Of a DNA stretch of 64,000 bases, positions 12,345-55,763 are shown one piece after another. The notes beneath the pieces are model-generated. The model saw nothing but the letters and a program-made list of their open reading frames with translations, did not search any database and had not been told where the DNA came from. The position numbers were made by a program, and so were the translations under genes. The number at the start of each line of letters is the position of its first letter. Positions within the stretch are counted from its first letter, which is position 1. The DNA is from Macrostomum lignano (lineage: Eukaryota), in assembly GCA_002269645.1 (NCBI GenBank), contig NIVC01000266.1:1-64000 (forward strand). The letters are read 5' to 3'.

Positions 12345-12590
12345 CATTCACCCCACTCCACTATCAGCCAATCAGGAAACCCGTCCATCCACCCCACTCC
12401 ACTATCAGCCAATCAGGAAACCCGTCCATCCACCCCACTCCACTATCAGCCAATCAGGAAACCCGTCCATCCACCCCACTCCACTATCAGCCAATCAGGA
12501 AACCCGTCCATCCACCCTACTCCACTATCAGTCAATCAGCGAACCCGCCCATTCACCCCACTCCACTATCAGCCGACCCGGCCACCACAC
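12345..12590 (+). repeat. 41-bp tandem repeat (~6 copies) carrying AGCCAATCAG CCAAT boxes, directly upstream of TAM41
   Basis: Period 41 (12361/12402/12443). Unit CCACCCCACTCCACTATCAGCCAATCAGGAAACCCGTCCAT. Confidence 0.9.
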
Positions 12591-12620
12591 ATTTCACTCT
12601 TCCACTCTTCAGCGGCCCGA

Positions 12621-13811
12621 ATGAGCGAGCCGACGCTGCGGCTACTCCGGCGCATAGTCGGCTCTTTTCCTCAGCCAATGAGCGCCTGCTTCGCCTACGG
12701 CTCGGCGGTGTTTGAACAGTCTGGCCGGGTCCGCGGCAGCGGCATGCTAGACCTAGTGTTCGTGGTGCCGGACAGTCGAGCTTGGCACGAGGCCAACCTG
12801 GCCAGACACCGGTCGCACTATTCCGGCTTGGGCAGTCTGGGTGCTGGCGCGGTCGCCCGCATACAGGAGGGCCTCGGAGCCGGTGTTTATTTCAATACGC
12901 TGGTGCCCGCGGCCGAGGGCCGGACAGTGAAGTACGGCGTGGTCAGCGTCGACTCTCTGCTGGCCGATCTGACCGAGTGGCGCTGGCTGTACCTGGCCGG
13001 CCGGCTGCACAAGCCCGTTGCCTGGGTTGTTGAGCCGGACAGTACTGGCCAAGACTGTCCGAGATTATCTGAAGCTTTGGATGCCAACCGGACGGCGGCA
13101 CTCGCCGCGGGTCTGCTGACTTTGCTGCCGGACAGTCGGGTTGATCGACGACGCCTGCTGGCGGCCGTCTGCGGGCTCAGCTACGGTGGTGACGTTCGGA
13201 TGACCTTTGCTGAGGACTCCGGCAAGGTGCGATGGTTTTCTGGTTCAAATATTTTTGACACCTTTTCTTTGAAACGGGCAGTTATCTAAAAAATTGCCGT
13301 AGCAACTTTTGTGTAGAGTTTACCAGCTAGTAAATAAATCAATGGAGCGGAGTGATATGCTTTTTTCTTACTACTTGTTAGTTGTCGAACTCACGAAAAC
13401 AATTCTCAGGTCCAGAACATCGCCGTGCCGCAGGCGCCGCTGCTGACAGACATCTACCGTCCGCTGGCCGCTAAACGACTGCCTTTTCTTACCTGGCAGC
13501 AACAAGACTCCGCTGATTCCAACGATGACGTCATCACTTGGACGGCCGAACCCGACCAGCTGGCCGAGCTTATTGCCTGCCTGCCGGCTCCGCTGGCCTC
13601 GGAGCTCACTGCGCCACTGCAATCCGGCGCCAGCGCGCGTGACATCGCCAAAATTCTACGGAGTCGACTTCGTCGTATCGTGTCCAGGTCCAGCCTCGGC
13701 CAAACGGCGAAGAGCGCCGTCACAGCTGGTGTGCTCAAGTCCGTGCGCTACGGCGGCGCTAAGGTGGCCAAGTGGTTCGCCTCAGTTGCACCGTGGTTAA
13801 CAAAACGATAA
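12621..13811 (+). CDS. TAMM41: Mitochondrial phosphatidate cytidylyltransferase Tam41/Mmp37, 335 aa
   Basis: Exons 12621-13226 and 13410-13811, phase 0, 1008 nt. Family motifs FAYGSAVFEQ, MLDLVF, GVYFNTLV, KYGVVS, DLTEWRWLYLAGRLHKPV, LSYGGDVRM-AED-GKV-NI. Confidence 0.95.
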
Positions 13812-13844: not shown

Positions 13845-13965
13845 TACCCACCCCACTCCATTCTGCTCCAGCAGCCAATCAGATCGCCCCATGTAGCCAC
13901 CCCACTCCATTCTGCTCCGGCAGCCAATCAGATCGCCCCATATAGCCACCCCACTCCGTTCTACA
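13845..13965 (+). repeat. ~49-bp repeat (2.5 copies) related to the TAM41 upstream array
   Basis: Shares CCACCCCACTCCA and CAGCCAATCAG with 12345-12590, same orientation. Confidence 0.75.
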
Positions 13966-14629: not shown

Positions 14630-15183
14630 CTAGCCGACAAAAATCGCCGCCAATTCGCTGTTCAGCTTCAGGAGATTTCGCACCGATTTGAACTGCATCG
14701 CGTGACTCGCGCAGGATTCTGAAATTTGATTTTTTGCATTTATTATGCCGATTTTTCCTCTCGCTACTACTAACAGTAGAGTCTAAGAAATCGTCACTGG
14801 TAAAAAAGGCCTCAACTCACCAGCCGTGGCCGCCTCGGAGTTCACCGTGCTGGGGGCGGCGGCCATGACGGCGCGGCTTAACTCTGGCGTCATGCCTACC
14901 AGGCCGTGCAAAGCGGTTTCCATGGCGACAGCATCGATCAGGGAGTCGCCGTCGGATCTGCTTGACATGCGCTGTTAGGAATAGGAGTGTTGGTTTCTGC
15001 GTATCAGCTACGAGTCTGCAAGTGCAAATAGGCGGAATCCAAGCCTGGGGGATCCTCACCGTCATAGCGTCTCTCAGGATTGCTTCGGCACCGTCTGGGC
15101 AGCAAAGCAGAGCGGCTGCGATGTGCAGCCAGCGGGGGTCGATGCGGCCGCTGCCTGACTGGAACGGAGCGGGGATGACTGTC

Positions 15184-15240
<57 letters not shown>

Positions 15241-18028
15241 GCAGAACCGCACCCAGTCGAAGATGTCAAACACGAGTCGCATCCAGGACTCCAGCGGCCC
15301 GGGCAGGGCGGCCTCCGCTGCCAGCTCGTGCGGACACAGCAGCTTGGGCGGCCCAGGCGTCAGTCGGTTCAACAGCTGCACTGCCTGGTCGTACCCACCG
15401 TCTTTGTCTTCGCCGCAGTCATTCTGGTCGCCTGCAGACGCTGAGGCTGGTAGCAGGCGTCGGAACAGGCGACGCAGACCGCTCAGCGGGAAGCCGAGGT
15501 GGCGGAGGCCGCGACGGCGAGCCGCTTTGAACAGCAGGACGTCCGTGTAGGAATGGTCGCTCACTGGCAGGCCGGCGTGCCTGGAGATTCGTTATGAGAG
15601 AGGACAACAGCCAATCAGCGAGCGCGGAGGATGGGGTGGGCGTCGCGGGTTAAAAATGAGGGACTTCACTGAATATACTACTATTAAAGACGGCAAATGA
15701 GTACATCCAATGTCTTTAAAATTCTTTACCTAGCCAGGAGATCGCGGACATTGTTGGCGTAAAGCTGTGGATTGGCGCGCTCTTCAGCCGACGGATGATA
15801 CACAGGTAAGAACTGCAGCGGCAGGTTGATTGGGAATGAAGATTGGGGACAGGAAAGCCTCATTACAAAACGGGTTTCAAGTTTGGTTCAGGGTGGAATT
15901 CCAGGTGTGGGTTCAGGACCGGTTCTCAGGTGTGGGTTCAGGACCGGTTCTCAGGTGTGGGTTCAGGACCGGTTCTCAGGTGTGGGTTCAGGACCGGTTC
16001 TCAGGTGTGGGTTCAGGACCGGTTCTCAGGTGTGGGTTCAGGACCGGTTCTCAGGTGTGGGTTCAGGACCGGTTCTCAGGTGTGGGTTCAGGACCGGTTC
16101 TCAGGTGTGGGTTCAGGACCGGTTCTCAGGTGTGGGTTCAGGACCGGTTCTCAGGTGTGGGTTCAGGACCGGTTCTCAGGTGTGGGTTTATGAACATTTA
16201 GTATTAAGCTATTAAGATTAAGCTACCTGCACTGTTGCGAATTACTGTGTCTATACCGGTACAAACCTCAACGTGCAGCTCAGAGTAGACCCGAGAGCCG
16301 CACCTGAAGATCATATGGAACCTGCAAATGACGGGATATGATATCATTTTAATTGGGATATGATGGCTTACGATGGGATAAATATCCCCCCCCGATCTAC
16401 TACTCACATGGAGGGCCCGTCAACAGCCCAGCACTGCAGCTGCAGGGGATCCCGATGCCGCACCAGCACCGGCTGCACCGGGACGCCGGGAGCGAAGGCG
16501 CCCAGACGGAAGCCGATCAGCGCCCCGCCATTGGTGCACGTGCCTTCGGGGAAGACCAGCAGCTGGCGGAAGCCTCCGCCATTCAGGCAGCTGCGCGCCC
16601 TGTCTACAATTTCCTCGGCCGCTTTGGCGCGCATCCGGCGATTGTCCCGGTACACCACCACCGCCTCGCCTGCTGGCACCATCACTGCGGGACAGGGCAA
16701 GTGGGGGCTGTGTACTGCCGGCTATTGGGGGCTGTGAACTGCCGGGTATTGGGGGCTGTGAACTGCCGGATATTGGGCTTTGAACTGCTGGCTATTGGGG
16801 GCTGTGAACTGCCGGGTATTGGGCTGTGAACTGCCAGGTATTGGGGACTGTGAACTGCCGGCTATTGGGGGCTGTGAACTGCCGGCTATTGGGGGCTGTG
16901 AACTGCCGGCTATTGGGGGCTGTGAACTGCCGGCTATTGGGGGCTGTGAACTGCCGGCTATTGGGGGCTGTGAACTGCCGGCTATTGGGGGCTGTGAACT
17001 GCCGGCTATTGGGGCTGTGAACTGCCAGGTATTGGGGACTGTGAACTGCCGGCTATTGGGGGCTGTGAACTGCCTGGAGGTGTTGTTGAAAGACCCTATT
17101 TAAGACTGTTTACAGTGACTAATAGGGACGTGCTTGCAAAAACTATTAATAAGCACACCATTATAAAAGAAATTCTTCGGCGCCTTGGTCACCGGAGCGA
17201 GCATCGGGCGCTGGCAGAAGAACACCACCGTGTCAGTCAGAGAGGTGTGCGGCGCCGCCACCAGCAGAGGCGCCTCGCGGACACTGGCGCGCCGGCCTTT
17301 CAGGTGAATTCGCTGGTAGCCGCCCACGAACGCCCCATGCGGCCGATGTTGAGCAGCAGGTGATCCGCCACCCAGCTGGATATTGGGGTGTAAAGGTACT
17401 CTTTTTTCCTGTAGGTAGCAGCCTTTGCAATGTGCATTTTTATGCAAAGCTGTGCAAAGCTCCAGCGACCTCCCCAATGTACACTGCATTCCCGACCAAC
17501 CCCGCTTCCCAATGTACATTCCACTCCAAACCAACCCCACCTCCCGAATGTACACTCCACTCCCGACCAACCCCACCTCCCCAATGTACACTCCACTCCA
17601 GACCAACCCCACCTCCTCAATGTACACTCCATGTAACAGGTAGGATTTTGTGTCCATCCTGCCTGCACCTTCTGCTCACGTCGGATAACAAAGAATTGAA
17701 CTCGAAGCACGGTTTTTCTGGGCCCAGGCTGCTGCGGCCACCCCCAAAAACCTCACCTCCGCCAAGGAGACAGAGGCGCGGTGGCTTTGCCCCCAATCTG
17801 GGTGACAAAAGACACCAGGAAAGCCAAGGCCAGCGACAGGATCAGCAGAAGCAGCCGCACGGGGAACAGCAGCAAGCCGAGCAGGGGCACAGTCAGATAG
17901 TGGTACCAGAAGAAGCCCGCCCGATGGTAAAACGGATTGAACGGCCGAGGCGGCAGAGGCAGCGAGCAGACGCAGGTGTCGGCCGTGTCTGCCGTGACGG
18001 CCGAGTCACCGCTGGACGACGGCTGCCC
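14630..18028 (-). CDS. LPCAT: Lysophosphatidylcholine acyltransferase LPCAT1/2-like with degenerate EF-hand C-terminus, ~524 aa; one apparent 1-nt frameshift; no genomic ATG in the first exon
   Basis: Exons 18028-17757, 17375-17159, 16684-16408, 16321-16267, 15812-15730, 15580-15253, 15158-15060, 14971-14821, 14718-14630; all GT-AG. Phases are consistent after adding one base in the C4 run at 17333-17336. Motifs [17 protein letters not shown] (HxxxxD), [52 protein letters not shown]. Confidence 0.92.
15180..15243. repeat. (GACA)n in an LPCAT intron
   Basis: Directly visible. Confidence 0.95.
15898..16190. repeat. 25-bp minisatellite AGGTGTGGGTTCAGGACCGGTTCTC (~11 copies) in an LPCAT intron
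   Basis: Near-perfect tandem copies. Confidence 0.95.
16703..17075. repeat. 24-bp minisatellite GCTATTGGGGGCTGTGAACTGCCG in LPCAT intron 2
   Basis: Tandem copies directly visible. Confidence 0.95.
17469..17631 (+). repeat. 36-bp minisatellite GACCAACCCCACCTCCCCAATGTACACTCCACTCCA in LPCAT intron 1
   Basis: About 4.5 copies. Confidence 0.93.
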
Positions 18029-18171
18029 CTGAAAGACGGCGGCGGCGGCGTCAACAGAGATTGTTGCGGCTGATGCGAGTAGTCTAGCACGATTATTCTC
18101 TAACAATATTTTAAATCGATTTTGTCTGGTCCAGTACTGCAGCTTTTTACATTAGAATGAGGGTTATTTAT

Positions 18172-18740
18172 GAGTGGAATTTACATTGGGGAGGTAGGGT
18201 TGGTAGGGAATGGAGTGTACATTGGGGAGGTGGGGTTGGTCTGGAGTGGAGTGTACATTGGGGAGGTGGGGTTGGTCTGGAGTGGAGTGTACATTGGGGA
18301 GTAGGGTTGGTCTGGAGTGGAGTGTACATTGGGGAGTAGGGTTGGTCGGGAGTGGAGTGTACATTGGAGAGGTGGATTTGGTCTGGAGTGGAGTGTACAT
18401 TATATTAGGGAGGTGGGGTTGGTCGGGAATGGAGTGTACATTGGGGAGGTGGGGTTGGTCTGGAGTGGAGTGTACATTGGGGAGTAGGGTTGGTCGGGAG
18501 TGGAGTGTACATTGGAGAGGTGGATTTGGTCTGGAGTGGAGTGTACATTATATTAGGGAGGTGGGGTTGGTCGGGAATGGAGTGTACATTGGGGAGGTGA
18601 GTTCGTCGGGAGCGAGTGTACATTGGGGGTGGGGTTGGTCGGGAGTGGAGTGTACATTGGGAAGGTGGATTTGGTCTGGAGTGGAGTGTACATTGGGGAG
18701 TGGGGTTGGTCAGGAGTGGAGTGTACATTGGAGAGGTGGG
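18172..18740 (-). repeat. Same 36-bp minisatellite in inverted orientation, upstream of LPCAT exon 1
   Basis: Unit TGGAGTGGAGTGTACATTGGGGAGGTGGGGTTGGTC is the reverse complement of the 17469-17631 unit; about 16 copies. Confidence 0.93.
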
Positions 18741-19251
18741 GTGATAATTTCAATTGACTACTAAAGTAATATCTGTAGTCTGAATTGCTGAAACAATCGG
18801 TGAAATATGGTAATATTTATCAATCATAAAATGATGTAGCCTTTGGTTATAGAGGCTACATTAATATCCGCAGTTATCCTGTATATTTGCAAAGAAAACG
18901 TCAGCATTGCAACACGCAATTTTCAGGTTGCATTATTACTGTCGCCTTAGGATAAAAAAGAAGTGAACAAAAGTTACGCACAGGTAAATTCAGATTAAGT
19001 GCCAGCGGAGTGTTTAAGATAGAATAAATTCAGACGAATAACGAAAGAAAATACAAAAAGGTTTTTATAAATAAAATTAAGGCATTTGTATCAGCGCTGG
19101 ATAGCACCACAGATAATATAGAATGACTATGATAATATAGGTTTATGCATTAGCCGTGATTTAGCTTAAATTTTTGTTTTAACTTGCCAATTCTTAAATA
19201 GTCGGGAATTGCTAAACTGAAGTTCAAATAGAAAAAACAATTTCGGGACAC

Positions 19252-19278
19252 ACAAGAGGTCCCGGGTTCGAACTCGGA
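19252..19278 (+). other. Isolated tRNA T-arm / Pol III B-box-like fragment
   Basis: GAGGTCCCGGGTTCGAACTCGG; no convincing A box or cloverleaf. Confidence 0.25.
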
Positions 19279-19454
19279 AAATTAATTCAGGGTTTATTGC
19301 ATAATAGAAAATCTACGCATCAATACATAGAGGTGCTGCATTGCAATCTGGAAAATATATAAAAAAATTACAGGTAAGCACACAAACTGTGCTGCTACTC
19401 TACAGTATCTGGCACACTTGGCCAGATTACACAATCCTATCTATCCAGTGAGAT

Positions 19455-20010
19455 AGGGCCGGATTCTCAGGTGTTGGGGTTCAGTGCCGGATTCTCAGGT
19501 GTTGGGGTTCAGGGCCGGATTCTCAGGTGTTGGGGTTCAGTGCCGGATTCTCAAGTGTTGGGGTTCAGTGCCGGATTCTCAGGTGTTGGGGTTCAGGGTC
19601 AGAATCTTCAGGTGCTAGGGTTCAGGTTTTAGTTCAGGGTCAGATCCTCAGATGTTGGGGTTCAGAGTCAAATTCCTCAGGTGCTAGGGTTCAGGGTCAG
19701 ATTCTCAGGTGCTAGGGTTCAGGTTTTAGTTCAGGGTCGGATTCCTCAGGTGCTTGGGTTCAGGTTTTAGTTCAGGTCGGATTCCTCAGGTGTTGGGGTT
19801 CAGGGTCAGAATCCTCAGGTGCTAGGGTTCAGGTTTTAGTTCAGGTCGGATTCCTCAGGTGCTAGGGTTCAGGTTTTAGTTCAGGTCGGATTCCTCAGGT
19901 GCTAGGGTTCAGGTTTTAGTTCAGGTCGGATTCCTCAGGTGCTAGGGTTCAGGGTCAGAATCCTCAGGTGCTAGGGTTCAGGTTTAGTTCAGGTTCGGAT
20001 TCTCTGGTTT
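19455..20010. repeat. Composite ~28-38-bp minisatellite (GGATTCTCAGGTGTTGGGGTTCAG / GCTAGGGTTCAGGTTTTAGTTCAGG)
   Basis: Tandem copies. The CTCAGGTG..GGGTTCAG core is shared with 15898-16190. Confidence 0.9.
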
Positions 20011-20108
20011 CAGTTTTTCAGCTTTGATACGCGGAACAAGTGTCAGACGATGTTAACTCAATAAAAATTCAAATATTCAAACAAATATCAGTGTAACTGT
20101 CCCAGAGC

Positions 20109-22491
20109 TCAGACCAGGTAGACAGTATCTATGCAGGAGAAGCCCGTGGCAACTCCGCCCTCGTCCGTAAACGCTGATTTCGTTCTCAACACGTGACCAG
20201 CCGAGCAGTTCAATCGCTCAGAGTTGTTCTTAGCCACCAGAGCGCCGTAGATGCCCAGCTCGGAGATCGCAGACACGCACAGCGGCATCTCCGGCCGGCG
20301 GGACAGCCGCTGATCGGCTTTGAGCATCAGCGACACCTGCTGCTGAGGCCGGATGCGCCGCATCAGGATGTACGCGGCCGACTGTCGGGTTGTCAGGCGG
20401 CTGGCGAAGTCCACCACGTCGCGGCCGTAGATATTGTTGCCGCCGCCTTCTCGCTGCGGCTTCAGTACGAAGTCTTCGGGGTCGGCCAGCAGCCAGCGGT
20501 GCGCTCTGCGGGCATCGAATGAAATGGATGCTGTGCGGAGGAATATGCAGCAGAATTAGCTGCAGCTCAAACCGAAACTGAAACCGAAACGATGATCCAA
20601 ATTAAAATCAAAGATAGAAACGAAACCGAAACCGAATCTGAAACTAAAGCCAAAACCAAAACTCAAACTACATGTAAACCGGAAACCGAAACTAAAACTA
20701 AATCTGAAACCCGAAACTGAAACTAAACCCAAAACTGAAACTGAAAAATAACACGATATACCGAAACTCAAAATAAACCAAAAACCGAAACCGAAGCTAA
20801 ATTCAAAAACTGAAAACTGAACCCAAAACCTAAAAACTAAAACCTAAAACCTGAGCTCACCTCGAGTCGCTCAGCACGCATTGATCAACAAACGTGGCCT
20901 CAACTTTGGCGCTCTTCCCCGGCAGATAGCGCGCCACGGCGCCGGGTTCGCAGAGCGCCGCCTGTACAGCCTTGGTGTTGGCCAGCATGTAGGCCAGGCT
21001 CGGACACTTGATGGCCCGCGATCGCTCCATCAGCAGCTTGGCGCTCCAGGCCACGCCGGCCGGGTCGGAGAAGTGATCGGGCGAGTAGCCGTGCCGGTAG
21101 TACACAATGGCCACCTCCTGGTCAGCCAGGTACAGCCGGCCGGAGCTCTCCTCCAGTCGGGCCGAGCTGGCAATCTGGTCGAAGCTCCGACGCAGAATCT
21201 GCGGCACGTGAACTGGCGAATCTGACGACGCGTCGGCGGCATAGATTTCGGCTTCCAGTGTTCGCTGGTCGAAAATATTTCGCTCGTCTGGCGACACTAC
21301 GAACAGGATGGCGGCTTCCGGCCGGCCGTACAGCTTGAAGGCCTGGATGAAGGCTTCGCCGAAGGTCTCGGCTGGCCGGTTGTCGGGCAACCGGTGGGCC
21401 AGCTGGCGCTCGCTGACACCGGCGGCCGACATCACCTGGCGGTGCACAGTCGACAGGCGCTGGGCCAGGCCGCCGAAGCTGGATGCCATCAGGTTGATTT
21501 CCACCTGCGATTGTTTTGAAAGGAGAGATGCCAGATCCATTGCTTCCAAATTCAAAATCTCACCCTGCAGACTTTCTGAGATTCAAAATCTCACCTTTAA
21601 GAGATATTTGGAGCTTCAAAGTCTGATCTTGAAGATTTTCTGGGCTTCAAAGTCTGACCTTGAAGATTTTCTGGGCTTCAAAGTCTGACCTTGAAGATTT
21701 TCTGGGCTTCAAAGTCTGACCTTGAAGATTTTCTGGGCTTCAAAGTCTGACCTTGAAGATTTTCTGGGCTTCAAAGTCTGACCTTGAAGATTTTCTAGGC
21801 TTCAAAGTCTGACCTTGAAGATTTTCTAGGCTTCAAAGTCTGACCTTGAAGATTTTCTGGGCTTCAAAGTCTGACCTTGAAGATTTTCTGGGCTTCAAAG
21901 TCTGACCTTGAAGATTTTTAGAGCTTTAAAATATTTTCCTGGAGCCACCAGAAAATGCCACAATAGGTAAAAACTGCAGAGTTACATTATCCCAAATATT
22001 TTAATTCCTACAGACTTTGTATGCCAATGCAACCCCAACCCCCTCAACCACCCTCGCACCTGTTTAAGCCCGGCCTCTTCATCCAGCATATAGTCGGCTC
22101 GATTCAAAGCCAAAGTGATTGGCTGGTCAGCGCCAGACTGCCGGACAGTTTGGTACATGTCCCACAGGGCGGACAGGAACGAGTCCGACTCGGCCGCAGG
22201 TGGGATCACCCGGCACAGGAAGTTGTGATCCCGGGACACCCGGTGGTACAGCGAGTTGAACAGGGCCTGCAGCTCAACTGCTTGGTTGAACGCCTCCTTG
22301 GAGAAGGAGGACGGCACCAGGGTGATTGGCGCCATCATGCAGCGGTCGGGGGCGGCGGAACCAGACGAAGAGGATGCCGGATTGTCTTTTAGTAGCAGGC
22401 CGTTCATGCAGGCCAGGTCTCTGGCCAGACTGGACAGGCGGGCCTGCTGGCTTCCCGTCAGCCCGCTAGAAGGGTTGCGCCTGTGCTGCTG
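20109..22491 (-). CDS. GSS: Eukaryotic glutathione synthetase, ~491 aa; conserved N-terminus extends upstream of the first genomic ATG (22407)
   Basis: Exons 22491-22060, 21504-20861, 20505-20109; phases 0/2; 1473 nt. Motifs MAPITLVPS, LNRADYM, KQVEINLMASSFGGL, ERNIFDQ, VYYRHGYSP, SRAIKCP, FVLKPQREGGGNNIYG, AYILMRRIRP, ISELGIYG, GHVLRTK, EGGVATGF. Confidence 0.96.
20570..20853. repeat. Degenerate AAAC(C/T)(G/A)-type low-complexity repeat filling GSS intron 2
   Basis: Iterations of AAACCGAAACT and AAAACCT. Confidence 0.85.
21590..21925. repeat. 31-bp minisatellite CCTTGAAGATTTTCTGGGCTTCAAAGTCTGA in GSS intron 1
   Basis: Period 31 (21661/21692). Confidence 0.95.
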
Positions 22492-22589
22492 CTGCGGGCG
22501 GGCGAATGAGTTTTAGTTGCTATGGAGACGGCTGGGATGGCAAGGCGGGTAGGGTAGCGACCATAGAATTCTTGGGAGAGTGAGAAGAC

Positions 22590-24115
22590 AGAGTGACAGT
22601 GACAGGAAGAGGAGAGTGACGGACAGATTGACTGTAAGAGGAGAGTGACGAACAGAGTGACAGTAACAGGAGAGTAACAGGAAGAGGAGAGTGACGGACA
22701 GAGTGACAGGAAGACGAGAGTGCCGGAGAGAGTGACAGTAAGAGGAGAGTGACGAACAGAGTGACAGTAAAAGGAGAGTGACGAACAGAGTGACAGGAAG
22801 AGTAGAGTGACGGACAGAGTGACAGAAAGAGGAGAGTGACGGACAGAGTGACAGGAAGACGAGAGTGCCGGAGAGAGTGACAGTAAGAGGAGAGTGCCGG
22901 AGAGAGTGACAGTAAGAGGAGAGTGACGAACAGAGTGACAGTAAAAGGAGAGTGACGAACAGTGACAGGAAGAGGAGAGTGACGGACAGAGTGACAGGAA
23001 GAGGAGAGTGACGGACAGAGTGACAGAAAGGAGAGTAACGGACAGAGTGACAGGAAGAGGAAAGTGACGGACAGAGTGACAGTAACAGGAGAGTAACAGG
23101 AAGAGGAGAGTGACGGACAGAATGACAGGAAGACGAGAGTGCCGGAGAGAGTGACAGTAAGAGGAGAGTGACGAACAGAGTGACAGTAAAAGGAGAGTGA
23201 CGAACAGAGTGACAGAAGAAGAGAGTGACAGAGTGACAGGAACAGGAGAGTGACGGACAGAGTGACAGGAAGACAGGAAGAGGAGAGTGACGGACAGAGT
23301 GACAGAAAGGAGAGTAACGGACAGAGTGACAGAAAGAGGAGAGTGACGGACAGAGTGACAGGAAGACGAGAGTGCCGGAGAGAGTGACAGTAAGAGGAGA
23401 GTGCCGGAGAGAGTGACAGTAAGAGGAGAGTGACGAACAGAGTGACAGTAAAAGGAGAGTGACGAACAGTGACAGGAAGAGGAGAGTGACGGACAGAGTG
23501 ACAGGAAGAGGAGAGTGACGGACAGAGTGACAGAAAGGAGAGTAACGGACAGAGTGACAGGAAGAGGAAAGTGACGGACAGAGTGACAGTAACAGGAGAG
23601 TAACAGGAAGAGGAGAGTGACGGACAGAATGACAGGAAGACGAGAGTGCCGGAGAGAGTGACAGTAAGAGGAGAGTGACGAACAGAGTGACAGTAAAAGG
23701 AGAGTGACGAACAGAGTGACAGAAGAAGAGAGTGACAGAGTGACAGGAACAGGAGAGTGACGGACAGAGTGACAGGAAGACAGGAAGAGGAGAGTGACGG
23801 ACAGAGTGACAGAAAGGAGAGTAACGGACAGAGTGACAGGAAGAGGAAAGTGACGGACAGAGTGACAGGAAGAGGAGAGTGACGGACAGTGACAGGAAGA
23901 GAGTGACGGACAGAGTGACAGGAAGAGGAGAGTGACGGACAGAGTGACAGGAAGAGAGTGACGGACAGAGTGACAGGAAGAGGAGAGTGACGAACAAAGT
24001 GACAGGAAGAGGAGAGTGACGGACAGAGTGACAGGAAGAGGAGAGTGACAGGAGGAGGAGAGTGACAGGTAGGAGAGTGACGAACAAAGTGACAGAAAGA
24101 GGAGGGTGACAAGAA
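22590..24115. repeat. Purine-rich ~23-29-bp minisatellite (GAGTGACGGACAGAGTGACAGGAAGAGGA) with a 507-bp higher-order duplication
   Basis: Identical variant strings recur at 22861/23368 and 23221/23728. Confidence 0.93.
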
Positions 24116-24469
24116 GCATTAACAGTCACTATATTTAAATTGGTCAAGCCAAACTAACATAATCAAGGACAAAGAAATTAATTCTAGACAGAATGTTTGT
24201 ATTTTTGGGGTTGCACGCAAAATAGTCTTTGTCAGTATATTTCTAGTTACCAGACTGAGCCTCGGACAAAGGAAAATGCAACCGGATATTTCTGTCAACA
24301 TTACGTAATAAATACGCGAGAGTCAATTATGAATTATGACAGTGCGGATTTCATACGCATTATAAAATGTACAAGTTTTCACTAGCAAAATGCTGCGTTT
24401 ACGAGTGAATGAGAGGCCAACAAGCTGGGTTGCAACAGCATGAGTGTAATATAATATAAGCCGTCAGAA

Positions 24470-24870
24470 ATCCCTAGCTATTCTAGCCAATTAGAAAACG
24501 TCTCGCTTTTCTAGCCGATTAGAGAACGTCTAACTTGTCTAGCCAATGAGAGGACGGCTAGCTTTTCTAGCCAATCAGATAAATCCTAGCTTTTCTAGCC
24601 AACTAGAGAATGCCTCGCCTTTTCTAGCCAATGAGAGGATATCTAGCTTTTCTAGCCAATCAGAGAACTCCTAGCTTTTCTAGCCAATTAGAGAATGCCT
24701 CGCTTTTCTAGCCAATGAGAGGATATCTAGCTTTTATAGCTAATTAGAGAACTCCTAGCTTTTGTAGCCAATCAGAGGACGCTTAGCTTTTCTAGCCAAT
24801 TAGAGAACGTCTGACTTTTCTAACCAATTACAGAACGCTTGACGCTAAGCTGCTCCAGCCAATCAAAGAC
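24470..24870 (+). repeat. ~29-bp CCAAT-box minisatellite (TTTTCTAGCCAATCAGAGAACTCCTAGC) abutting the ABT1 stop codon
   Basis: About 13 degenerate copies, each with AGCCAAT(C/T/G)AG or a close variant. Confidence 0.9.
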
Positions 24871-24880
24871 CAGCAAAATA

Positions 24881-25892
24881 TCAAGATTTCCCTCGCCCAC
24901 CTCCTAGCAGTTGTGCCAAAAATGTAGGATTATTAACGGCCTGCAACTCGGGATCGTTGTTGCCCTTGCGGCTCCGCCGTTCGCGTCGACGCCGCTGTTC
25001 AACCCGCTGCAACTCCGGCAAAGGTCGAAACTGATCGCCCTTGGCTTGCTTAGCTCGCTCCTGAGATTTCGACTGCTCCAAGGATTCCTTGTAGAGCTTG
25101 CCGATCCGTCTAGCTTGCTGAATCTCCATTGCCAGGCGCTTATTTCTAACGGCTTTCTCGTTGGCCTCTCTATAGGTGATGTCGGTCCAGGCAAAGCCGG
25201 GCAGGTAGCGCAGATTCCACAGCTGGCCAGCCCACGGCTTTTTCTTGTCGGCTACTTCGGTGGCGTTCAAAGAGGCGACGCAACGCTTTGCGTCTGATCG
25301 GCGAAGGAATTCGGCCCAGCCTTCGCTGTACAGCCGCCAGCGCTTGCGGGCCGATGCTTCTTCGACCTTTGCGTGGTAAAAATGCAGGGAAAGAAGTGCT
25401 GATGTTAAAAAGCAATCCAGCCAATTAAGAAAAAAATTAACAAAATCCAACCCAATGAGAACACAGCAAGCGAAATCCAGCCAATCAGAACACAATAAAG
25501 CAAAATCCATCCAATCAGAACACAGCAAGCAAAATCCAGCCAATCAGAACACAGCAAGCAAAATCCAGCCAATCAGAACACAGTAAAGCAATTAGATTAC
25601 AGTACCATTCGAACCAATCAGATTTGAGTAGCATTTCAACCAATCAGAGCAGAGTACTAAAAAGGCAGCTTTAAAAACTAACCTGCAAAAAAACTCGCCC
25701 TAACTTTCCATATGGCGAGAGGTGCTCCCGAACCAGTTTCACCGTCATACCGTGCGGTACGCTGCTCAGATACACAATTCCAGGCTTTAGCGACTTCCCA
25801 GTTGAGGATTTGGGGAGTTCCTCCTTGAGCTCCTCTTCCATAGGCTCGGCTGCTTCGTCTGCTGACATGCCGCTTTGGGGATTAGTGGTCAT
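24881..25892 (-). CDS. ABT1: Activator of basal transcription 1 / Esf2 (RRM, pre-rRNA processing), 231 aa
   Basis: Exons 25892-25683 and 25366-24881, phase 0, AAG acceptor. Motifs PGIVYLSSVPHGM, YGKLGRVFLQ, YSEGWAEF, AKRCVASLN, LWNLRYLPGFAW. Confidence 0.94.
25410..25650 (+). repeat. ~29-bp CCAAT-box minisatellite (AAATCCAGCCAATCAGAACACAGCAAGC) in the ABT1 intron
   Basis: Tandem copies directly visible. Confidence 0.9.
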
Positions 25893-25944
25893 GAATTGGG
25901 ATCCAGAGTTGCTAAGCTGCTTCCAAATATTAGTTTGTTGGGAT

Positions 25945-26100
25945 TCTTTGTGGGCGGTTTTGGATAATTTGGAGATTCCTGGATTCCTGAATAGTTTTGG
26001 GATTTCTGGGTGGTTTTGGGATTTCTGGATGGTTTTGGGATTCCTGGAAAGTGTGGGAATTTGGTTTTGGGATGTCTAGGTGTTTTTGGCATTTCTAATT
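25945..26100. repeat. TTTTGGGATT-type degenerate repeat between DDX51 and ABT1
   Basis: Several TTTTGGGAT(T) units. Confidence 0.75.
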
Positions 26101-26294
26101 GGTTTTGCGATCAATGAGTAAGAGTAAAAAAGTCGAGCCATTTCTCACAGTACAGCCAAAAAATGCATATGAAAATTGTTGGCTAGGCTGACAATTTCAG
26201 TTATATAATTAGTTAAAGTGAAATGCCTCACAGGGGGGACCAGATAATTATATTCCAACAGTTTCCTTTCAAATGGAAGATCGAAAAACAAAAA

Positions 26295-29200
26295 TCAATC
26301 GTCAACTTCTTTTGATTTGTCTTCTTTTGTCTTTCTCTTTTTCATGCTGCTTTTATTGGCAGTTTTCTTATTCTGATCTTTCGACTGGTCTTCGCTCGCA
26401 GCTTCGACCGCCGACTCGCCCGCCTTCTGCTCCTCGTGCAGCCGGTTCAGGGCAGTCTGGTACCTGGCCTCGTACCGCTTAGTCTTGCTGCCGTGCAGCC
26501 GAACCTCTCGTACTTGACGCCCGCCAGCGCTCAGCATCCGGCGGAAGTGCAGAACCTCGCGCCGCTCCAGCAGGGTGTACGCGGCTCCGGCTCGGCCGGC
26601 TCGCGCAGTGCGGCCGGCGCGGTGCACGTAGGTTCGGAGCGAGGCCGGCCGGTCGTAGCACACGACGGCATCTACGCTGGGCAGGTCCATGCCGCGGGCC
26701 ATGCTGTCCGAGCAGACCAGTACGGACAGTTGGCCGGTGGAGAAACGACGCAGGATGCGGGCTCGCTTGGGCACCTGCGGATTGGGGGAGGGAGATGGGT
26801 AAAAAATCCCAAAATCCCAAAAAGAAATCCCAAAACTCGATCGAAATCCCAAAAGCTCGAATCCCAAAAACTCGATTGAAATTCTCAAAACTCGATTGAA
26901 ATCCTAAAAACTCGATTTAAATCCCAAAAACTCGATTGAAATCCCAAAAAAACGATTGAAATCCTCAAAACTTTAAAAACTTCAAAAACTACAAAAGTTG
27001 AAATACTCAAATCCCAAAAACTCGATTGAAATCCTCAAAACTCGATTGAAATTCCTCAAAACTCGACCGAAATCCCAAAACTCGATCAAAATCCCAAAAG
27101 CTCGATTGAAATCCCAAAAACTCAAAATGCCTCAAGCCCGTAAAAGCGCGGAAGCAGGAAAATCCAGGAACATCAGCAGCACTGCTAGCAGTACTCACGG
27201 GCAGCCTGGCAGACACGGCCTCGCAGGTGACTCGCGGATCGGCAAAAAGTGTAATTAGCGAGGCCAGACGGTGCGCCGACTCGCGCGAGTTCGTGAAGCA
27301 AAGCACCCGGCTGCGGCCGAGGCCCAGCACCAGGTGGATGACAAACAGCGGCTTCTGAGACGGCTTGAGCTGCACGAAGAACTCGCTCAGACGACCGGGC
27401 GCGGCGGACACCTCCAGCTCCTTGTCGGACTCCGCCGTGGCAGTCAGCAGCAGCGGATTGTGCAGCCGGAATCGCTGGAGCAGCTCCGGGTTGTGGGTGA
27501 GGGTGGCGCTCAGCAGCAGCTTCTGAAGGTGCGGCGGCTTCGCGTGCAGCCACGAGTGGATGCTGGGGTGCGGCATCGGCCTGCTCAGATGAGGATTCGT
27601 AAGCAGATTCAGTAAGATTTATCTTATTCATATCCCATGTAATTTTGCCCGCGTGTCAAAATTTCTGTATCCAACCAGCACAGTTGTGATCTTACCCATA
27701 TTTTTGTACAAAGAAATCAATTTTTAAATTCCTATGCCAGATTAATTTGCTTAGTCCCAGATTCCAAGGATTCTTAGTCCCAGATCCTGGGGATTTCTAG
27801 TCCCAGATCCCGAGGATTTCTAGTCCCAGATCCCAGGGATTCCTAGTTCCAGATCCCGGGAATTCCTAGTCCCAGATCTCAGGGGTTTCTAGTCCCAGAT
27901 CCCAGGGGTTTCTAGTCCCAGATCCCGGGAATCCTAGTCCCAGATCCCAGGGGTTTCCAGTTCCAGATCCCATGAATTCCTAGTTCCAGATCCCAGGGGT
28001 TTCTAGTCCCAGACATACATGCGCAACCTCCAAAATTCGGTCGGCCATGCGACTTAGTTTTAACAAAAATGCGACATAGTTTTTGGCTAAAAATGCGAAT
28101 TACATGTAAAAAACCCTAGCGTAAGTAGCGTAAAGCAAAATTAACACTACTTTGGGTAAACGGCAAGAGTAACTATAACTGTCTTATTAAGTCAAAATGC
28201 CTCGTCAGCTACTTAGTACTACTACTTGGTATTTTTTTGGGTGGGCATTTTTGCGACTTCCTTGTTTGGCCGCCAAATCGGTCGGCCGGATCGGCCGACT
28301 CGGCCGACTGTTGCGCATGTATGGTCCCAGATACCGAGGATTTCTAGTCCCAGATCCCGGGAATTCCTAGTCCCAGATCCCAGGGATTTATAGTTCCAGA
28401 TCCCATGAATTCCTAGTCCCAGACTAGTTCCAGATCCCGGGAATTCCTAGTCCCAGATCCCAGGAATTCCTAGTCCCAGATCCCGGGAATTCCTAGTCCC
28501 AGATCCCGGGAATTCCTAGTCCCAGATCCCAGGGATTCCTAGTTCCAGATCCCGGGAATTCCTAGTCTCAGATCCCAGGGGTTCCTAGTCCCAGATACCA
28601 GGAATTCTTAGCCCTAAATACATCACGATTCACTTCTCTATCCATGATCCAATGCACCAAAGTACAATATCCATCCCAAATTCACATCACAGATTCCCAG
28701 TCTCCGAGTGTAAATCCATCCCTACCCAGATTCTAACACAGAGAAATAGAAACCCACACCCAAACTAAAACAGCATGCCAGTCCCAGATCATCACAAAGC
28801 TAATTAACAAGCTCCAAACCCCAGGCCTCACTTGTCCAGCAGCCGTTCCAGCAGTCCGAACCAATCCTGCTTCTGTTCGGCCATGACCCGATCTGCCTCA
28901 TCAATGATAAGCATGCGCAGCCTAGCCAGACTCAATCCCGGACAGTTGAGCAGGTGATCGGCCAGACGGCCGGGAGTGCAAATGACCAGATCGGCCAGAG
29001 GGCGGTAGCTGCCATCTGACATGAGGCGGACCAGCTGGTGCCGCTCCTTCTCCAGGCTGCGCTCGCCAACCAGCAGCTGGCAGCGAATCTGGCGGCGACA
29101 ACCGTCAGAGTCGGCTGCTCCCTCGGACAGAGCGGCCAGCAGCCGGAGGCAAACCTGGTGCACCTGACAAGCCAGGGTTAGGAAATTGAATGATGGGATT

Positions 29201-30612
29201 TTAGCTGGGGGATCACGAGATTGGGACTCTAGCTGGGGGATCAGCAGATTGGGATGTTAGCTGGGGATCAAGAGATTGGGATTCTAGCAGGGGGATCAGC
29301 AGATTGGGATGTTAGCTGGGGATCAGGAGATTGGGATTCTAGCAGGGGGATCAGCAGATTGGGATTTTAGCTGGGGGATCAGGAGATTGGGATTTCAGCT
29401 GGGGGATCAGATTGGGATGTTAGCTGGGGGATCCGGAGATTGGGATGTTAGCTGGTGGATCAGGAGACTGGGATTTTAGCTGGGTATCAGCAGATTGGGA
29501 TTCTAGCTTGGGGATCAAGAGATTGGGATTCTAGCAGGGGGATCAGCAGATTGGGATGTTAGCTGGGGATCAGGAGATTGGGATTCTAGCAGGGGGATCA
29601 GCAGATTGGGATTTTAGCTGGGGGATCAGGAGATTGGGATTTCAGCTGGGGGATCAGATTGGGATGTTAGCTGGGGGATCCGGAGATTGGGATGTTAGCT
29701 GGTGGATCAGGAGACTGGGATTTTAGCTGGGTATCAGCAGATTGGGATTCTAGCTGGGGGATCAGAACATTAGGATTTTAGCTGGGAGATGAGAACATTA
29801 GGATTTTAGCTGGGGATCAGGAGATTGGGATATAGCTAGGGGATCGGAATTTTGGGATTTAGCTAAAGGATTATGAGATTTCTAATTAAGCTATAAGATC
29901 CAGGATATTGGTATTGTAGCTAGGAGCTTCCGATTGCGGTTTTGGCTAGATAGAAGGGCCAACAAACTGTGATTTTAGCGGGGAACCGTTAGCTAGATTG
30001 TTTTTACATGGCTTACAGTTTGTAATCATTCTCGCGATCTCACCAGAGGAGTAGGAGCTCGGTAAAGGTATCAAATATGGGAGAAGCAGTTCCTATATTA
30101 GTGACAAGCCCCAGTGGCATCAAAAAGATTTCTATAAATAAAAGCCGGCAAACAAACCTGCATAGCCAGGTCCCGCACGGGCAGCACAATGATGCACCTC
30201 AGAGCCACAGTTTTGCAGGCAGCCAGCAGTTGCAGAGCCGGCAGCAGGTAGGCCAGAGTCTTGCCGCTGCCCGTAGCCGCGCACACGGCGAAGTCCCTCG
30301 GCCGAGTCCAGCTGTACCGATGGGACGCCAGCACCAGGGGCACGGAGGTGGCCTGCACAGGGAACAGGGTCTCCACACCGGTGGATCTGAGCGCTGAACG
30401 AATTGGCTCGCTCAGGCAGTCAATGGAATCAATTGGTACGGAAGCGTCTAAGCTGTTGTCAATAGCAACCGGCCGGCGCATCCATTCGGGCCGGTAGGCG
30501 CTGCCGGCTGAGCCGACGCCGAGGGGCGCGCGGCGCCGCTTTCGTGTTCGATCGGGAACGAGAGTGAAGCCGCCAACTGACGCCTGTTGGGCTTCCCCGT
30601 TGTCAAGGCCAT
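26295..30612 (-). CDS. DDX51: DEAD-box RNA helicase DDX51/Dbp6; 5' end needs a 1-nt correction to join ATG 30612 (or acceptor 30672) to the helicase frame
   Basis: Exons (30672/30612)-30158, 29163-28832, 27580-27199, 26774-26295; phases 0/2/0. Motifs LFPVQ, AATGSGKT, PVRDLAMQV, TPGRL, DEAD, QKLLLSATLTHNPE, SDSMARGMD, YVHRAGRTARAG. The RPEWMRRP, FAVCAATGSGKT and QKLLLSATLT context is typical of the DDX51/Dbp6 subfamily. Confidence 0.9.
26803..27125. repeat. ~20-bp repeat AAATCCCAAAAACTCGATTG in DDX51 intron 3
   Basis: Tandem copies directly visible. Confidence 0.9.
28014..28323. mobile_element. 310-bp non-autonomous DNA transposon (MITE), 14-bp perfect TIR, 8-bp TSD (hAT-like)
   Basis: CATACATGCGCAAC (28014-28027) and GTTGCGCATGTATG (28310-28323). 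GTCCCAGA is duplicated at 28006-28013 and 28324-28331. Internal TCGGCCGA-type subterminal repeats. Confidence 0.93.
28154..28217 (+). pseudogene. Degenerate 28S rRNA fragment (helix 69-71 region, R2/I-PpoI target) inside the MITE
   Basis: GGGTAAACGGCAAGAGTAACTATAACTGTCTTATTAAGTCAAAATGCCTCGTCAGCTACTTAGT vs conserved eukaryotic GGGTAAACGGCGGGAGTAACTATGACTCTCTTAAGGTAGCCAAATGCCTCGTCATCTAATTAGT: 51/64 ungapped identities by hand count. Confidence 0.88.
29195..29870. repeat. ~28-bp minisatellite GGGATTTTAGCTGGGGGATCAGGAGATT in DDX51 intron 1
   Basis: Tandem copies directly visible. Confidence 0.92.
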
Positions 30613-31303
30613 CAGCTGACGGCTTTGCCTCGTCAATTGAGGCTTTGGGGAAGCGTTGGGTTCGTCAATTTCCTGGAAAATTGTACCAGATCAATTTATT
30701 GCCTTTTATTTGCTAAAATTCATTCTCTATTAGTAGCAACTTGCAGTTTGCAGATAGAATATGCAGACATAAAAATATTTGAAGGATTAGTGTCGGGAAT
30801 GATTTTTTTCTCAGAATTGGGATTGGCATCAGGACTCGGGAATTGGGATTAGTTCTTTTAGTGTACTGTAGTTTGTAGACCAATACAGAGTTGAACAAAA
30901 TTGAACAATGTCAAGATCAAAAGGTAAAACATGACAGAATATATGCAAAGTTTTGTAACCAGCAAAGTAACAAATAATGATGGCTATTGGAATAAATTCT
31001 CAAAGTCTGCGGACACATGCCAAGTGTGACACATTTGCGCACCTAGCATTGCCAATCCTCCAGGGGCAAATGGGTAAACAGCAGGAGTAAATTCTACTGT
31101 GTTGCCTTGTAAACTAATAAGTAGTTTAATCCTGCACTGTTTGTCTAGTTATATTAAATAACTGATGGGATTAACTATGACCAACTTGCCTAAGCTGTCT
31201 ACTGCATGATCTTGTAAGCTTTATTAATTCAGCTAACAAGCAGTTTACTATTTTTCACTTAGCAGAAACTCCCAAAAATTTAGAACTTTGCACACCCCCT
31301 CAC

Positions 31304-35963: not shown

Positions 35964-36379
<416 letters not shown>

Positions 36380-42961: not shown

Positions 42962-42994
<33 letters not shown>

Positions 42995-53524: not shown

Positions 53525-55763
<2,239 letters not shown>

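What the first reader, a model, noticed from the sequence alone, without database searches (positions are those of the whole stretch)
14630..30672. Four-gene minus-strand cluster whose 5' acceptors are all in frame with the CDS: candidate operon primed by the spliced-leader AUG
Seen: DDX51, ABT1, GSS and LPCAT are head-to-tail. DDX51 stop to ABT1 ATG is about 400 bp; the other two gaps (about 2.4 and 2.1 kb) are mostly tandem repeat. Each gene has a candidate 5' acceptor in phase 0: TTTTCCAG|30672 (60 nt before ATG 30612), CAG|25916 (24 nt before ATG 25892), CCCGCAG|22491 and CTTTCAG|18028. Established: flatworms use SL trans-splicing, have polycistronic clusters of housekeeping genes, and their SL ends in an AUG that can act as initiator. 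Inference: one polycistronic unit (two ribosome-biogenesis factors, GSS and LPCAT) is resolved by trans-splicing, and some members have lost their own start codon. Caveats: the acceptors were chosen by eye and the taxon is inferred.
Basis: partly seen in the sequence, partly recalled or inferred. Interest (0 to 1): 0.82.

Follow-up and report, generated by a model that had tools for sequence, protein, structure and literature searches.

The report
Flatworm operon using spliced-leader start codon
This is a cluster of four housekeeping genes in the flatworm Macrostomum lignano; the public annotation already treats three of them as one multi-gene transcript cut by spliced-leader trans-splicing, and three of the four have no start codon of their own and most likely take it from the leader, which is a known flatworm mechanism.

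Summary
The window is Macrostomum lignano contig NIVC01000266.1:1-64000.

The core idea holds, on indirect evidence:
- The species' 35-nt spliced leader ends in ATG.
- DDX51, ABT1 and GSS share one published transcriptional-unit name (Mlig005657.gN).
- All four genes are annotated as 5'-partial in at least one of three paralogous loci.
- One public GSS model starts exactly at CAG|22491 and one LPCAT model exactly at TTTCAG|18028.
- DDX51, GSS and LPCAT have conserved coding sequence upstream of their first in-frame genomic ATG.

Corrections:
- "ATG 30612" is out of frame with the helicase and is ACG in one paralog. DDX51 itself lacks a start codon.
- In this contig a 1-bp homopolymer deletion puts acceptor 30672 out of frame, and another breaks LPCAT exon 2. 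Both are probably assembly errors.
- LPCAT carries a separate transcriptional-unit name.
- An in-frame AG is not significant: 4-5 of 10-16 AGs per region qualify.

I could not reach any SL-junction reads. Both mechanisms are published (Cheng 2006; Wudarski 2017; Ustyantsev & Berezikov 2021), so this is a good instance of a known kind.

The parts
26295..30672 (-). DDX51 (yeast Dbp6 orthologue). Exons are 30672/30481-30158, 29163-28832, 27580-27199 and 26774-26295. The 5' acceptor is TTTTCCAG|30672. There is no in-frame genomic ATG upstream of 30481.
   Evidence: The exon set reproduces the UniProt window-type model P0146 exactly from MRRPVAID onward. Orthology rests. The conserved GGFT and LPxW motifs lie upstream of M30481. 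30672 is the only [T/C]TNCAG site in the region.
30649..30653 (-). 1-bp deletion in a C-run (CGCTT-CCCC), relative to both paralogs. It puts acceptor 30672 out of frame with DDX51 in this contig.
   Evidence: Alignment A1. The window-type UniProt model P0146 reads ...EPNAYPKAS... in frame, so an assembly error is likely.
24881..25916 (-). ABT1/ESF2. The candidate acceptor is CAG|25916 (also AAG|25919), in frame and open. The gene has its own ATG at 25892. Exons are 25892-25683 and 25366-24881, giving 231 aa.
   Evidence: Its product carries ESF2_C. The NCBI model PAA86751.1 (Mlig005657g6) is 5'-partial and begins at 25886, two codons after the ATG.
20109..22491 (-). Glutathione synthetase. Exons are 22491-22060, 21504-20861 and 20505-20109. 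Three tandem in-frame acceptors (CAG|CAG|CAG) sit at 22491, 22488 and 22485. The first genomic in-frame ATG is at 22407, codon 29.
   Evidence: The exon set reproduces UniProt A0A1I8H5Z9 (P0001), which starts QQHRR with no Met, exactly. Homology to human GSS starts at residue 15-17, upstream of the ATG. An in-frame stop lies at 22515-22513.
14630..18028 (-). LPCAT-type acyltransferase. Exons are 18028-17757, 17375-17159, 16684-16408, 16321-16267, 15812-15730, 15580-15253, 15158-15060, 14971-14821 and 14718-14630. The acceptor is TCTTTCAG|18028. Exon 1 contains no ATG at all.
   Evidence: The same exon set in paralog L003 gives exactly NCBI PAA81356.1 (523 aa, partial, starting GQPSS at the acceptor). 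The NPF motif aligns 30 aa downstream of the acceptor, against 20 aa in a Priapulus homologue.
17335..17339 (-). 1-bp deletion in a G-run in LPCAT exon 2. It breaks the frame in this contig, so the NCBI model here starts at Met 17204 (375 aa).
18069..18071 (-). Alternative upstream acceptor CATCAG|18069, in phase 2. The SL ATG would open a 63-codon out-of-frame ORF here.
   Evidence: The UniProt LPCAT models P0150 and P0151 start at the first full codon after this AG (ATISVD / TTISVD).
22598..24838 (.). The ABT1-GSS spacer is mostly minisatellite (22598-24110 with a 29/58-nt unit, 24473-24838 with a 28-nt unit). 510 nt of the spacer is non-repeat.
   Evidence: The same spacer is about 1.25 kb in paralog L001.
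18172..20002 (.). The GSS-LPCAT spacer holds minisatellites at 18172-18742 and 19458-20002. 964 nt of the spacer is non-repeat.
12615..13811 (+). Tam41/Mmp37 gene on the opposite strand, with its own ATG. It marks the downstream end of the cluster.

Best explanation
**Proposed mechanism**
- This is a spliced-leader (SL) trans-spliced gene cluster of Macrostomum lignano. RNA polymerase II reads through DDX51, ABT1 and GSS, and probably LPCAT, as one precursor.
- 3'-end cleavage together with trans-splicing of the 35-nt SL (...TTGCATG) releases one mRNA per gene. The acceptors are at or near 30672, 25916, 22491 and 18028.
- Because the SL ends in AUG, joining it to a phase-0 acceptor creates the initiation codon.
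- DDX51, GSS and LPCAT have no genomic ATG upstream of conserved protein sequence, so they depend on that AUG. ABT1 keeps its own ATG and would only gain a 9-residue extension.
- The long spacers are minisatellite expansions inside a unit whose non-repeat spacers are under 1 kb.

**Shown**
- Organism, gene models, frames and the absence of ATGs.
- A shared transcriptional-unit name for three of the genes.
- Annotated 5' ends that coincide with two of the acceptors.

**Inferred**
- The exact SL junctions.
- Translation from the SL AUG.
- A single promoter.
- Inclusion of LPCAT in the same precursor.
For: **Organism and locus**
- GSS is 100% identical to an M. lignano entry, and the window equals NIVC01000266.1.

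**Published background**
- The M. lignano SL ends in ATG. The trans-acceptor motif is [T/C]TNCAG. 30% of genes are SL-spliced and 15% lie in operons. Repeats inflate operon spacers, and the operon rule is less than 1 kb after subtracting repeats.
- Genes named MligN.gK are cut from one transcriptional unit at SL-read and poly(A) signals.

**Annotation of this cluster**
- Names are DDX51 = Mlig005657g1/g4, ABT1 = g2/g6, GSS = g3; in the third locus DDX51 = Mlig002428g1 and GSS = g2.
- The repeat-adjusted spacers are 263, 510 and 964 nt.
- 5'-partial CDS are annotated for DDX51 (2 loci), ABT1 (2), GSS (3) and LPCAT (1).
- One model starts exactly at CAG|22491 and one exactly at TTTCAG|18028.

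**Conserved sequence upstream of the first genomic ATG**
- GSS aligns to human GSS from residue 15-17, while its ATG is codon 29.
- DDX51 has the GGFT and LPxW motifs upstream of M30481, and that Met aligns with I/L/M inside the motif.
- LPCAT has the NPF motif and a TM helix in an exon with no ATG.
- With an SL Met, the N-terminal lengths match those of orthologs.

**Precedent**
- Cheng et al. 2006: over 40 S. mansoni cDNAs need the SL AUG.
- The SL ATG is noted as a likely start codon in Macrostomum.
Against: - No SL-containing read or cDNA could be examined. The junctions are inferred from annotation boundaries.
- Those boundaries are imprecise: the NCBI 5' ends lie 15-30 nt downstream of the AG for DDX51, ABT1 and GSS.
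- LPCAT carries a different unit name, Mlig012950, and its repeat-adjusted spacer (964 nt) is only just under the 1-kb rule.
- ABT1 and GSS acceptors do not fit [T/C]TNCAG.
- In this contig, acceptor 30672 is out of frame with DDX51 and the LPCAT frame is broken.
- In paralog L003 the DDX51 acceptor reads TG, not AG.
- A second LPCAT acceptor at 18069 is out of frame.
- Arrays of CCAAT-like boxes sit in the ABT1 intron and just downstream of ABT1. They could mark internal promoters.
- Phase-0 AGs are common by chance, and only 28% of S. mansoni SL junctions are in frame.
Confidence: 0.68

Rival explanations
1. The genes are SL trans-spliced one by one but are not co-transcribed. Each gene, or at least GSS and LPCAT, has its own promoter and outron. 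The shared transcriptional-unit name would then reflect read-through or assembly bridging in a repeat-rich region. The SL AUG would still supply the start codons.
For: - Most SL-spliced M. lignano genes are not in operons.
- LPCAT is a separate unit.
- The raw spacers are 2.1-2.4 kb.
- GCCAATCAG arrays occur downstream of ABT1 and in its intron. The same motif array sits directly upstream of the independently transcribed Tam41 gene.
Against: - Three unrelated genes share one unit prefix in two loci, and two do in a third.
- The repeat-adjusted spacers meet the published operon rule.
- The DDX51-ABT1 gap is only 378 nt.
- An independent annotation even fuses DDX51 and ABT1.
Confidence: 0.2
2. 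The missing start codons are an annotation gap. Unrecognised upstream exons carrying an ATG would be cis-spliced to 22491, 18028 and 30672, or translation would start at internal or non-AUG codons.
For: - Flatworm acceptors are often shared between cis- and trans-splicing.
- The annotated 5' boundaries are imprecise.
- One LPCAT model starts at a different acceptor.
Against: - Two independent annotations, on two assemblies, give no Met for any of the three genes in any of three loci.
- The region just upstream of GSS is a 1.5-kb minisatellite.
- Starting at an internal ATG would delete conserved segments.
- With one added Met, the N-terminal lengths already match those of orthologs.
Confidence: 0.07
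3. This particular copy is a decaying paralog. The 1-bp deletions in the DDX51 5' extension and in LPCAT exon 2 would be real, so the window's DDX51 and LPCAT are not expressed as full proteins whatever the splicing.
For: - M. lignano DV1 carries duplicated chromosomes.
- Each of the three loci has its own lesion: the window has 2 deletions, L001 has 1 in LPCAT exon 1, and L003 has its acceptor AG changed to TG.
Against: - All the indels lie in homopolymer runs of a PacBio assembly.
- Window-type protein models from the independent ML2 assembly (P0146, P0150) are in frame at both sites.
- The rest of the coding sequence is intact and 98-100% identical between copies.
Confidence: 0.15

Closest known systems
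M. lignano SL trans-spliced operons / multi-gene transcriptional units (Wudarski et al. 2017, PMC5730564; Ustyantsev & Berezikov 2021, PMC8629364)
   Same: It is the same species and the same single 35-nt SL. The genes are same-strand conserved housekeeping genes, the spacers are inflated by tandem repeats, and the repeat-adjusted spacers are under 1 kb. Three of the genes already share a unit name, Mlig005657.
   Different: LPCAT is annotated as its own unit. Two of the four acceptors do not match the enriched [T/C]TNCAG motif. This specific cluster is not discussed in those papers; a full-text search for Mlig005657 found nothing.
Flatworm SL 3'-terminal AUG used as initiator methionine (Cheng, Cohen, Ndegwa & Davis 2006, J Biol Chem 281:733; cited in PMC9851317 and PMC12582326)
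   Same: The SL ends in AUG. The recipient ORFs are open from a phase-0 acceptor and have no AUG of their own upstream of conserved sequence.
   Different: That mechanism was shown experimentally in Schistosoma mansoni. Here it is inferred from sequence and annotation only. What stands out is that three of four clustered genes need it.
Caenorhabditis elegans operons (SL2-resolved)
   Same: There is a polycistronic precursor, and downstream genes are resolved by SL trans-splicing coupled to upstream 3'-end formation. The genes are housekeeping and ribosome-biogenesis genes.
   Different: M. lignano has a single SL with no SL1/SL2 specialisation. The spacers are kilobases of repeats rather than about 100 nt. 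The nematode SLs do not end in AUG.

Membership tests
M. lignano SL operon (criteria of Ustyantsev & Berezikov 2021) | Adjacent genes on the same strand, not interrupted by a gene on the opposite strand | tested here: met
   DDX51, ABT1, GSS and LPCAT are consecutive on the minus strand in three loci. The first opposite-strand gene, Tam41, follows LPCAT. No ORF of note lies in the spacers.
M. lignano SL operon (criteria of Ustyantsev & Berezikov 2021) | Repeat-adjusted intergenic distance below 1 kb | tested here: met
   The distances are 263, 510 and 964 nt after subtracting TRF arrays only. The third value is marginal.
M. lignano SL operon (criteria of Ustyantsev & Berezikov 2021) | Downstream genes carry SL-read-supported trans-splice sites | tested here: inconclusive
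   This is indirect only. It rests on gN naming and 5'-partial CDS in the public annotation, and on two models that start exactly at an AG.
M. lignano SL operon (criteria of Ustyantsev & Berezikov 2021) | One assembled precursor (transcriptional unit) spans the genes | tested here: inconclusive
   This is met for DDX51, ABT1 and GSS (prefixes Mlig005657 and Mlig002428). It is not met for LPCAT (Mlig012950). The authors note that units tend to split in repeat-rich spacers.
M. lignano SL operon (criteria of Ustyantsev & Berezikov 2021) | Trans-acceptor motif [T/C]TNCAG | tested here: inconclusive
   The motif is present at 30672 (TTCCAG) and 18028 (TTTCAG). It is absent at 25916 (AAGCAG) and 22491 (CCGCAG). 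The motif was found at only 9551 of 21754 sites in the paper, so it is not obligatory.
SL-AUG-initiated ORF (Cheng et al. 2006) | The SL ends in AUG | tested here: met
   The published M. lignano SL is CGGTCTCTTACTGCGAAGACTCAATTTATTGCATG. No SL gene lies in the window.
SL-AUG-initiated ORF (Cheng et al. 2006) | The acceptor is in phase 0 with the ORF, with no stop between | tested here: met
   This is met for ABT1, GSS and LPCAT in the window. For DDX51 it is met in paralog L001 but not in this contig (phase 2, because of a 1-bp deletion).
SL-AUG-initiated ORF (Cheng et al. 2006) | No genomic in-frame AUG upstream of conserved coding sequence | tested here: met
   This is met for DDX51, GSS and LPCAT. 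It is not met for ABT1, which has ATG 25892.
SL-AUG-initiated ORF (Cheng et al. 2006) | SL-exon junction seen in cDNA, and translation starting at the SL AUG | not testable with these tools
   Exact look-ups of the predicted Met-extended proteins found nothing. No transcript collection for this species was reachable.

The most novel reading that the evidence does not exclude
Choice of acceptor could act as a translational switch. At LPCAT two acceptors lie 41 nt apart: 18069 in phase 2 and 18028 in phase 0. They place the SL AUG either out of frame, giving a 63-codon dead-end ORF, or in frame, giving full-length enzyme. Because the gene has no AUG of its own, alternative trans-splicing alone would decide whether protein is made. 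More broadly, an operon in which three of four genes depend on the SL AUG would make trans-splicing, not transcription, the step that licenses expression.
Probability: 0.12. Interest if true: 0.55.

Novelty: new member of a known kind. Interest (0 to 1): 0.25.

Why it matters
- It is a clear worked example, in a transgenesis-capable flatworm model, of genes that cannot be translated without trans-splicing.
- It explains why DDX51, GSS and LPCAT are deposited as "partial" or Met-less proteins. It also explains why some copies are mis-annotated from internal Mets (497-aa DDX51, 375- and 420-aa LPCAT) or fused (799-aa DDX51-ABT1).
- Annotation pipelines for Macrostomum should add the SL ATG when they call ORFs.
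- It adds no new mechanism.

Tried and rejected
Rejected: it is out of frame, its ORF is 54 codons long, and it is not conserved.
- **My own first candidate, AAAG|30643.** Rejected after re-indexing. The exon would start at 30642, which is phase 2.
- **Direct transcript evidence.**
  - The protein collection holds only NCBI and UniRef entries for these genes, with no RNA-seq-assembly members.
  - Exact look-ups of seven hypothetical SL-Met or full-length proteins were all absent.
  - Mlig005657 and Mlig002428 were not found in the supplements of Grudniewska 2018 or Wudarski 2017, nor in any full text.
  - Wasik 2015 is not held.
- **Cross-species synteny.** The S. mansoni GSS contig is not on record, and no other Macrostomum proteins appeared. 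Gene order could therefore only be compared among three recent paralogs, which is uninformative.
- **LPCAT homolog search.** It returned no M. lignano entry, for reasons I cannot explain. I recovered the names by rebuilding the exact proteins instead.
- **Brute-force exon search.** It timed out. A restricted search gave too many solutions. Matching to model P0146 solved it.
- **Other scans.** Rfam, tRNA and SL-sequence scans of the window found nothing. No canonical AATAAA follows any of the four stops.
Full report
**Identity of the sequence**

The GSS fragments are 100% identical to a Macrostomum lignano UniRef entry. The exact NCBI protein maps to GCA_002269645.1 contig NIVC01000266.1. Its range 10109-32473 matches window 10109-32473 at 100%, so the window is positions 1-64000 of that contig.

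Two paralogous loci have the same order: L001 on NIVC01000263.1 and L003 on NIVC01000536.1. The order is DDX51, ABT1/ESF2, GSS, LPCAT, then Tam41 on the opposite strand. M. lignano DV1 is known to carry duplicated chromosomes, so this conservation says little.

**Check of the observation**

- The gene identities hold. Pfam supports them on the ORF pieces, ESF2_C is recorded on the ABT1 product, and the best homologs of the helicase are named DDX51.
- The gaps hold: 402 nt, 2389 nt (79% tandem repeat) and 2080 nt (54% tandem repeat).
- The four AG sites are at the stated coordinates.
- CAG|25916, CAG|22491 and TTTCAG|18028 are in phase 0 and open to the ORF.

The DDX51 part is wrong:
- ATG 30612 lies 131 nt from the helicase-frame ATG 30481, so it is in another frame. 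Its ORF ends after 54 codons.
- It is ACG in L003.
- In this contig, acceptor 30672 is in phase 2 with the true frame.

An objective scan shows that phase-0, stop-free AGs are common. They make up 4 of 16, 4 of 10, 5 of 11 and 5 of 11 AG sites in the four 5' regions. "All four in frame" therefore has no statistical weight. In S. mansoni only 28% of SL junctions are in frame.

**Gene models**

| Gene | Exons (window, minus strand) | Check |
|---|---|---|
| DDX51 | 30481-30158, 29163-28832, 27580-27199, 26774-26295 | Reproduces a UniProt model exactly |
| ABT1 | 25892-25683, 25366-24881 (231 aa) | |
| GSS | 22491-22060, 21504-20861, 20505-20109 | Reproduces UniProt A0A1I8H5Z9 exactly |
| LPCAT | Nine exons, 18028 to 14630 | The same structure in L003 gives NCBI PAA81356.1 exactly |

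**Missing start codons**

This is the real signal in the region.

- **GSS.** The frame is open from the stop at 22515-22513. The first ATG is codon 29 counted from 22491. Alignment to human GSS starts at residue 15-17, as in human residue 16.
- **LPCAT.** Exon 1 has no ATG at all, yet it encodes the NPF motif and the transmembrane helix shared with a Priapulus homologue. The motif sits at residue 31 here and residue 21 there.
- **DDX51.** The conserved GGFT and LPxW motifs of flatworm, annelid, brachiopod and human DDX51 lie upstream of M30481. That Met aligns with I/L/M inside LPxW[ILM]. No in-frame ATG lies between the upstream stop and it.
- **Ortholog lengths.** Adding one Met at the acceptor gives N-terminal lengths like those of the orthologs.
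- **Public models.** None of the models of these three genes, from two assemblies and two annotation efforts, starts with Met. The exceptions are models truncated to internal Mets where a frame is broken.

**What the literature and annotation say**

- M. lignano has a single 35-nt SL ending in ATG. 30% of its genes are SL-spliced and 15% lie in operons. Repeats inflate operon spacers, and the operon rule is less than 1 kb after subtracting repeats.
- In the Mlig_3_7 annotation, RNA-seq "transcriptional units" are cut into genes MligN.gK at SL-read and poly(A) signals.
- By exact look-up, the names are as follows:

| Locus | DDX51 | ABT1 | GSS | LPCAT |
|---|---|---|---|---|
| L001 | Mlig005657g1 | Mlig005657g2 | Mlig005657g3 | Mlig012950g1 |
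| Window | Mlig005657g4 | Mlig005657g6 | only name returned is Mlig005657g3 | Mlig012950g2 |
| L003 | Mlig002428g1 | not called | Mlig002428g2 | Mlig012950g3 |

- Three unrelated genes therefore sit in one published multi-gene unit, and LPCAT is a separate unit.
- The repeat-adjusted spacers are 263, 510 and 964 nt. By the 2021 rule all four would count as one operon if they are SL-spliced.
- The L003 LPCAT model begins exactly at the base after TTTCAG. The UniProt GSS model begins exactly at 22491.
- The other annotated 5' ends are less tidy. The NCBI ends of DDX51, ABT1 and GSS lie 15-30 nt downstream of the AG. I cannot explain this offset. It may come from how SL-read peaks were called.
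- The UniProt LPCAT models begin at another acceptor, CATCAG|18069, which is out of frame.

**Defects specific to this contig**

- Relative to both paralogs, the window lacks one base in a C-run at about 30651 and one in a G-run at about 17337.
  - The first shifts acceptor 30672 out of the DDX51 frame.
  - The second breaks LPCAT exon 2, which is why the NCBI model here starts at Met 17204.
- L001 has its own 1-bp loss in LPCAT exon 1. L003 has TG instead of AG at the DDX51 acceptor.
- Window-type protein models from the independent ML2 assembly are in frame at both window sites. I therefore think these are PacBio homopolymer errors, but that is an inference.

**Mechanism and rivals**

The best-supported reading (confidence about 0.68) is a trans-spliced polycistronic unit in which the SL AUG is the initiator for DDX51, GSS and LPCAT.

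- The main rival (0.2) keeps the SL AUG but gives the downstream genes their own promoters. LPCAT's separate unit and the CCAAT-like arrays speak for it. The shared unit name and the short non-repeat spacers speak against it.
- Hidden upstream ATG exons are unlikely (0.07).
- None of this could be tested directly. No SL-bearing reads or cDNAs for this species were reachable.

**Novelty**

Both ingredients are published: flatworm SL-AUG initiation (Cheng et al. 2006, cited; noted for Macrostomum) and M. lignano operons with repeat-filled spacers. Most of this cluster is already one named unit.

What seems unreported is that three of the four genes depend on the SL AUG, and that several deposited models are truncated or fused for that reason. 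This is a new member of a known kind. It is useful for annotation and is not surprising to a specialist.

Noticed in passing
window 12316-12574, 13848-13962, 24473-24838, 25414-25591, and a single copy at 15610: Four different minisatellites, with units of 41, 49, 28 and 29 nt, all carry the CCAAT-box-like core GCCAATCAG. It occurs 13 times against 0.86 expected, always on the + strand. One array ends about 40 nt upstream of the Tam41 CDS. The others lie just after the Tam41 and ABT1 stops and inside the ABT1 intron. They may be promoter-type elements.
   Followed up: partly
window 26306-25890 (minus strand); proteins P0140, P0145, P0146: UniProt (ML2-assembly) models fuse DDX51 and ABT1 into 791-799-aa proteins. 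The junction is ...KSKE|TTNPQ.... The implied 417-nt 'intron' is non-canonical (GT...TG). It removes the last three DDX51 codons, the stop, the spacer and exactly ABT1's ATG.
   Followed up: partly
window 25886-25892: Both NCBI ABT1 models (229 aa, partial) begin at TNPQ, two codons after the genomic ATG 25892, so the deposited protein lacks its own initiator. The 5' boundaries of the DDX51 and GSS models are likewise 15-30 nt downstream of the nearest AG. The reason is unknown.
   Followed up: partly
L003:3340-3420 (equivalent to window 30612-30675): In paralog L003 the DDX51 acceptor AG is TG (TTTTCCTGG). In the same copy the out-of-frame ATG 30612 is ACG. The two changes may be linked (no SL, hence scanning from a cap), or this may be coincidence.
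   Followed up: no
window 30479-30485: An out-of-frame ATG (30485-30483, followed by G) lies 4 nt upstream of the in-frame ATG 30481 and opens an 8-codon ORF. This is a further hint that 30481 is not the main DDX51 start.
   Followed up: no
window 22485-22493: GSS has three tandem CAG acceptors (CAG|CAG|CAG), all in phase 0. Slippage between them would only add or drop a glutamine after the SL Met.
   Followed up: no
L001:8731-9982 versus window 24880-22492: The ABT1-GSS spacer is about 1.25 kb in L001 but 2.39 kb in the window. The ABT1 gene spans 1.9 kb in L001 and 1.0 kb here. Minisatellite copy number differs strongly between recent paralogs.
   Followed up: partly
window 1668-6825, 35964-36379, 39948-42204, 42833-48590, 53526-55767, 59950-61661: The window is very rich in long micro- and minisatellite arrays (113 TRF rows). 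I saw no long non-repeat ORFs with protein hits for about 10 kb upstream of DDX51 (30.7-42 kb).
   Followed up: partly
(database behaviour): The homolog search with the LPCAT query returned no M. lignano protein, although three NCBI and two UniRef entries exist in the collection. The word-index search can therefore miss identical proteins.
   Followed up: no
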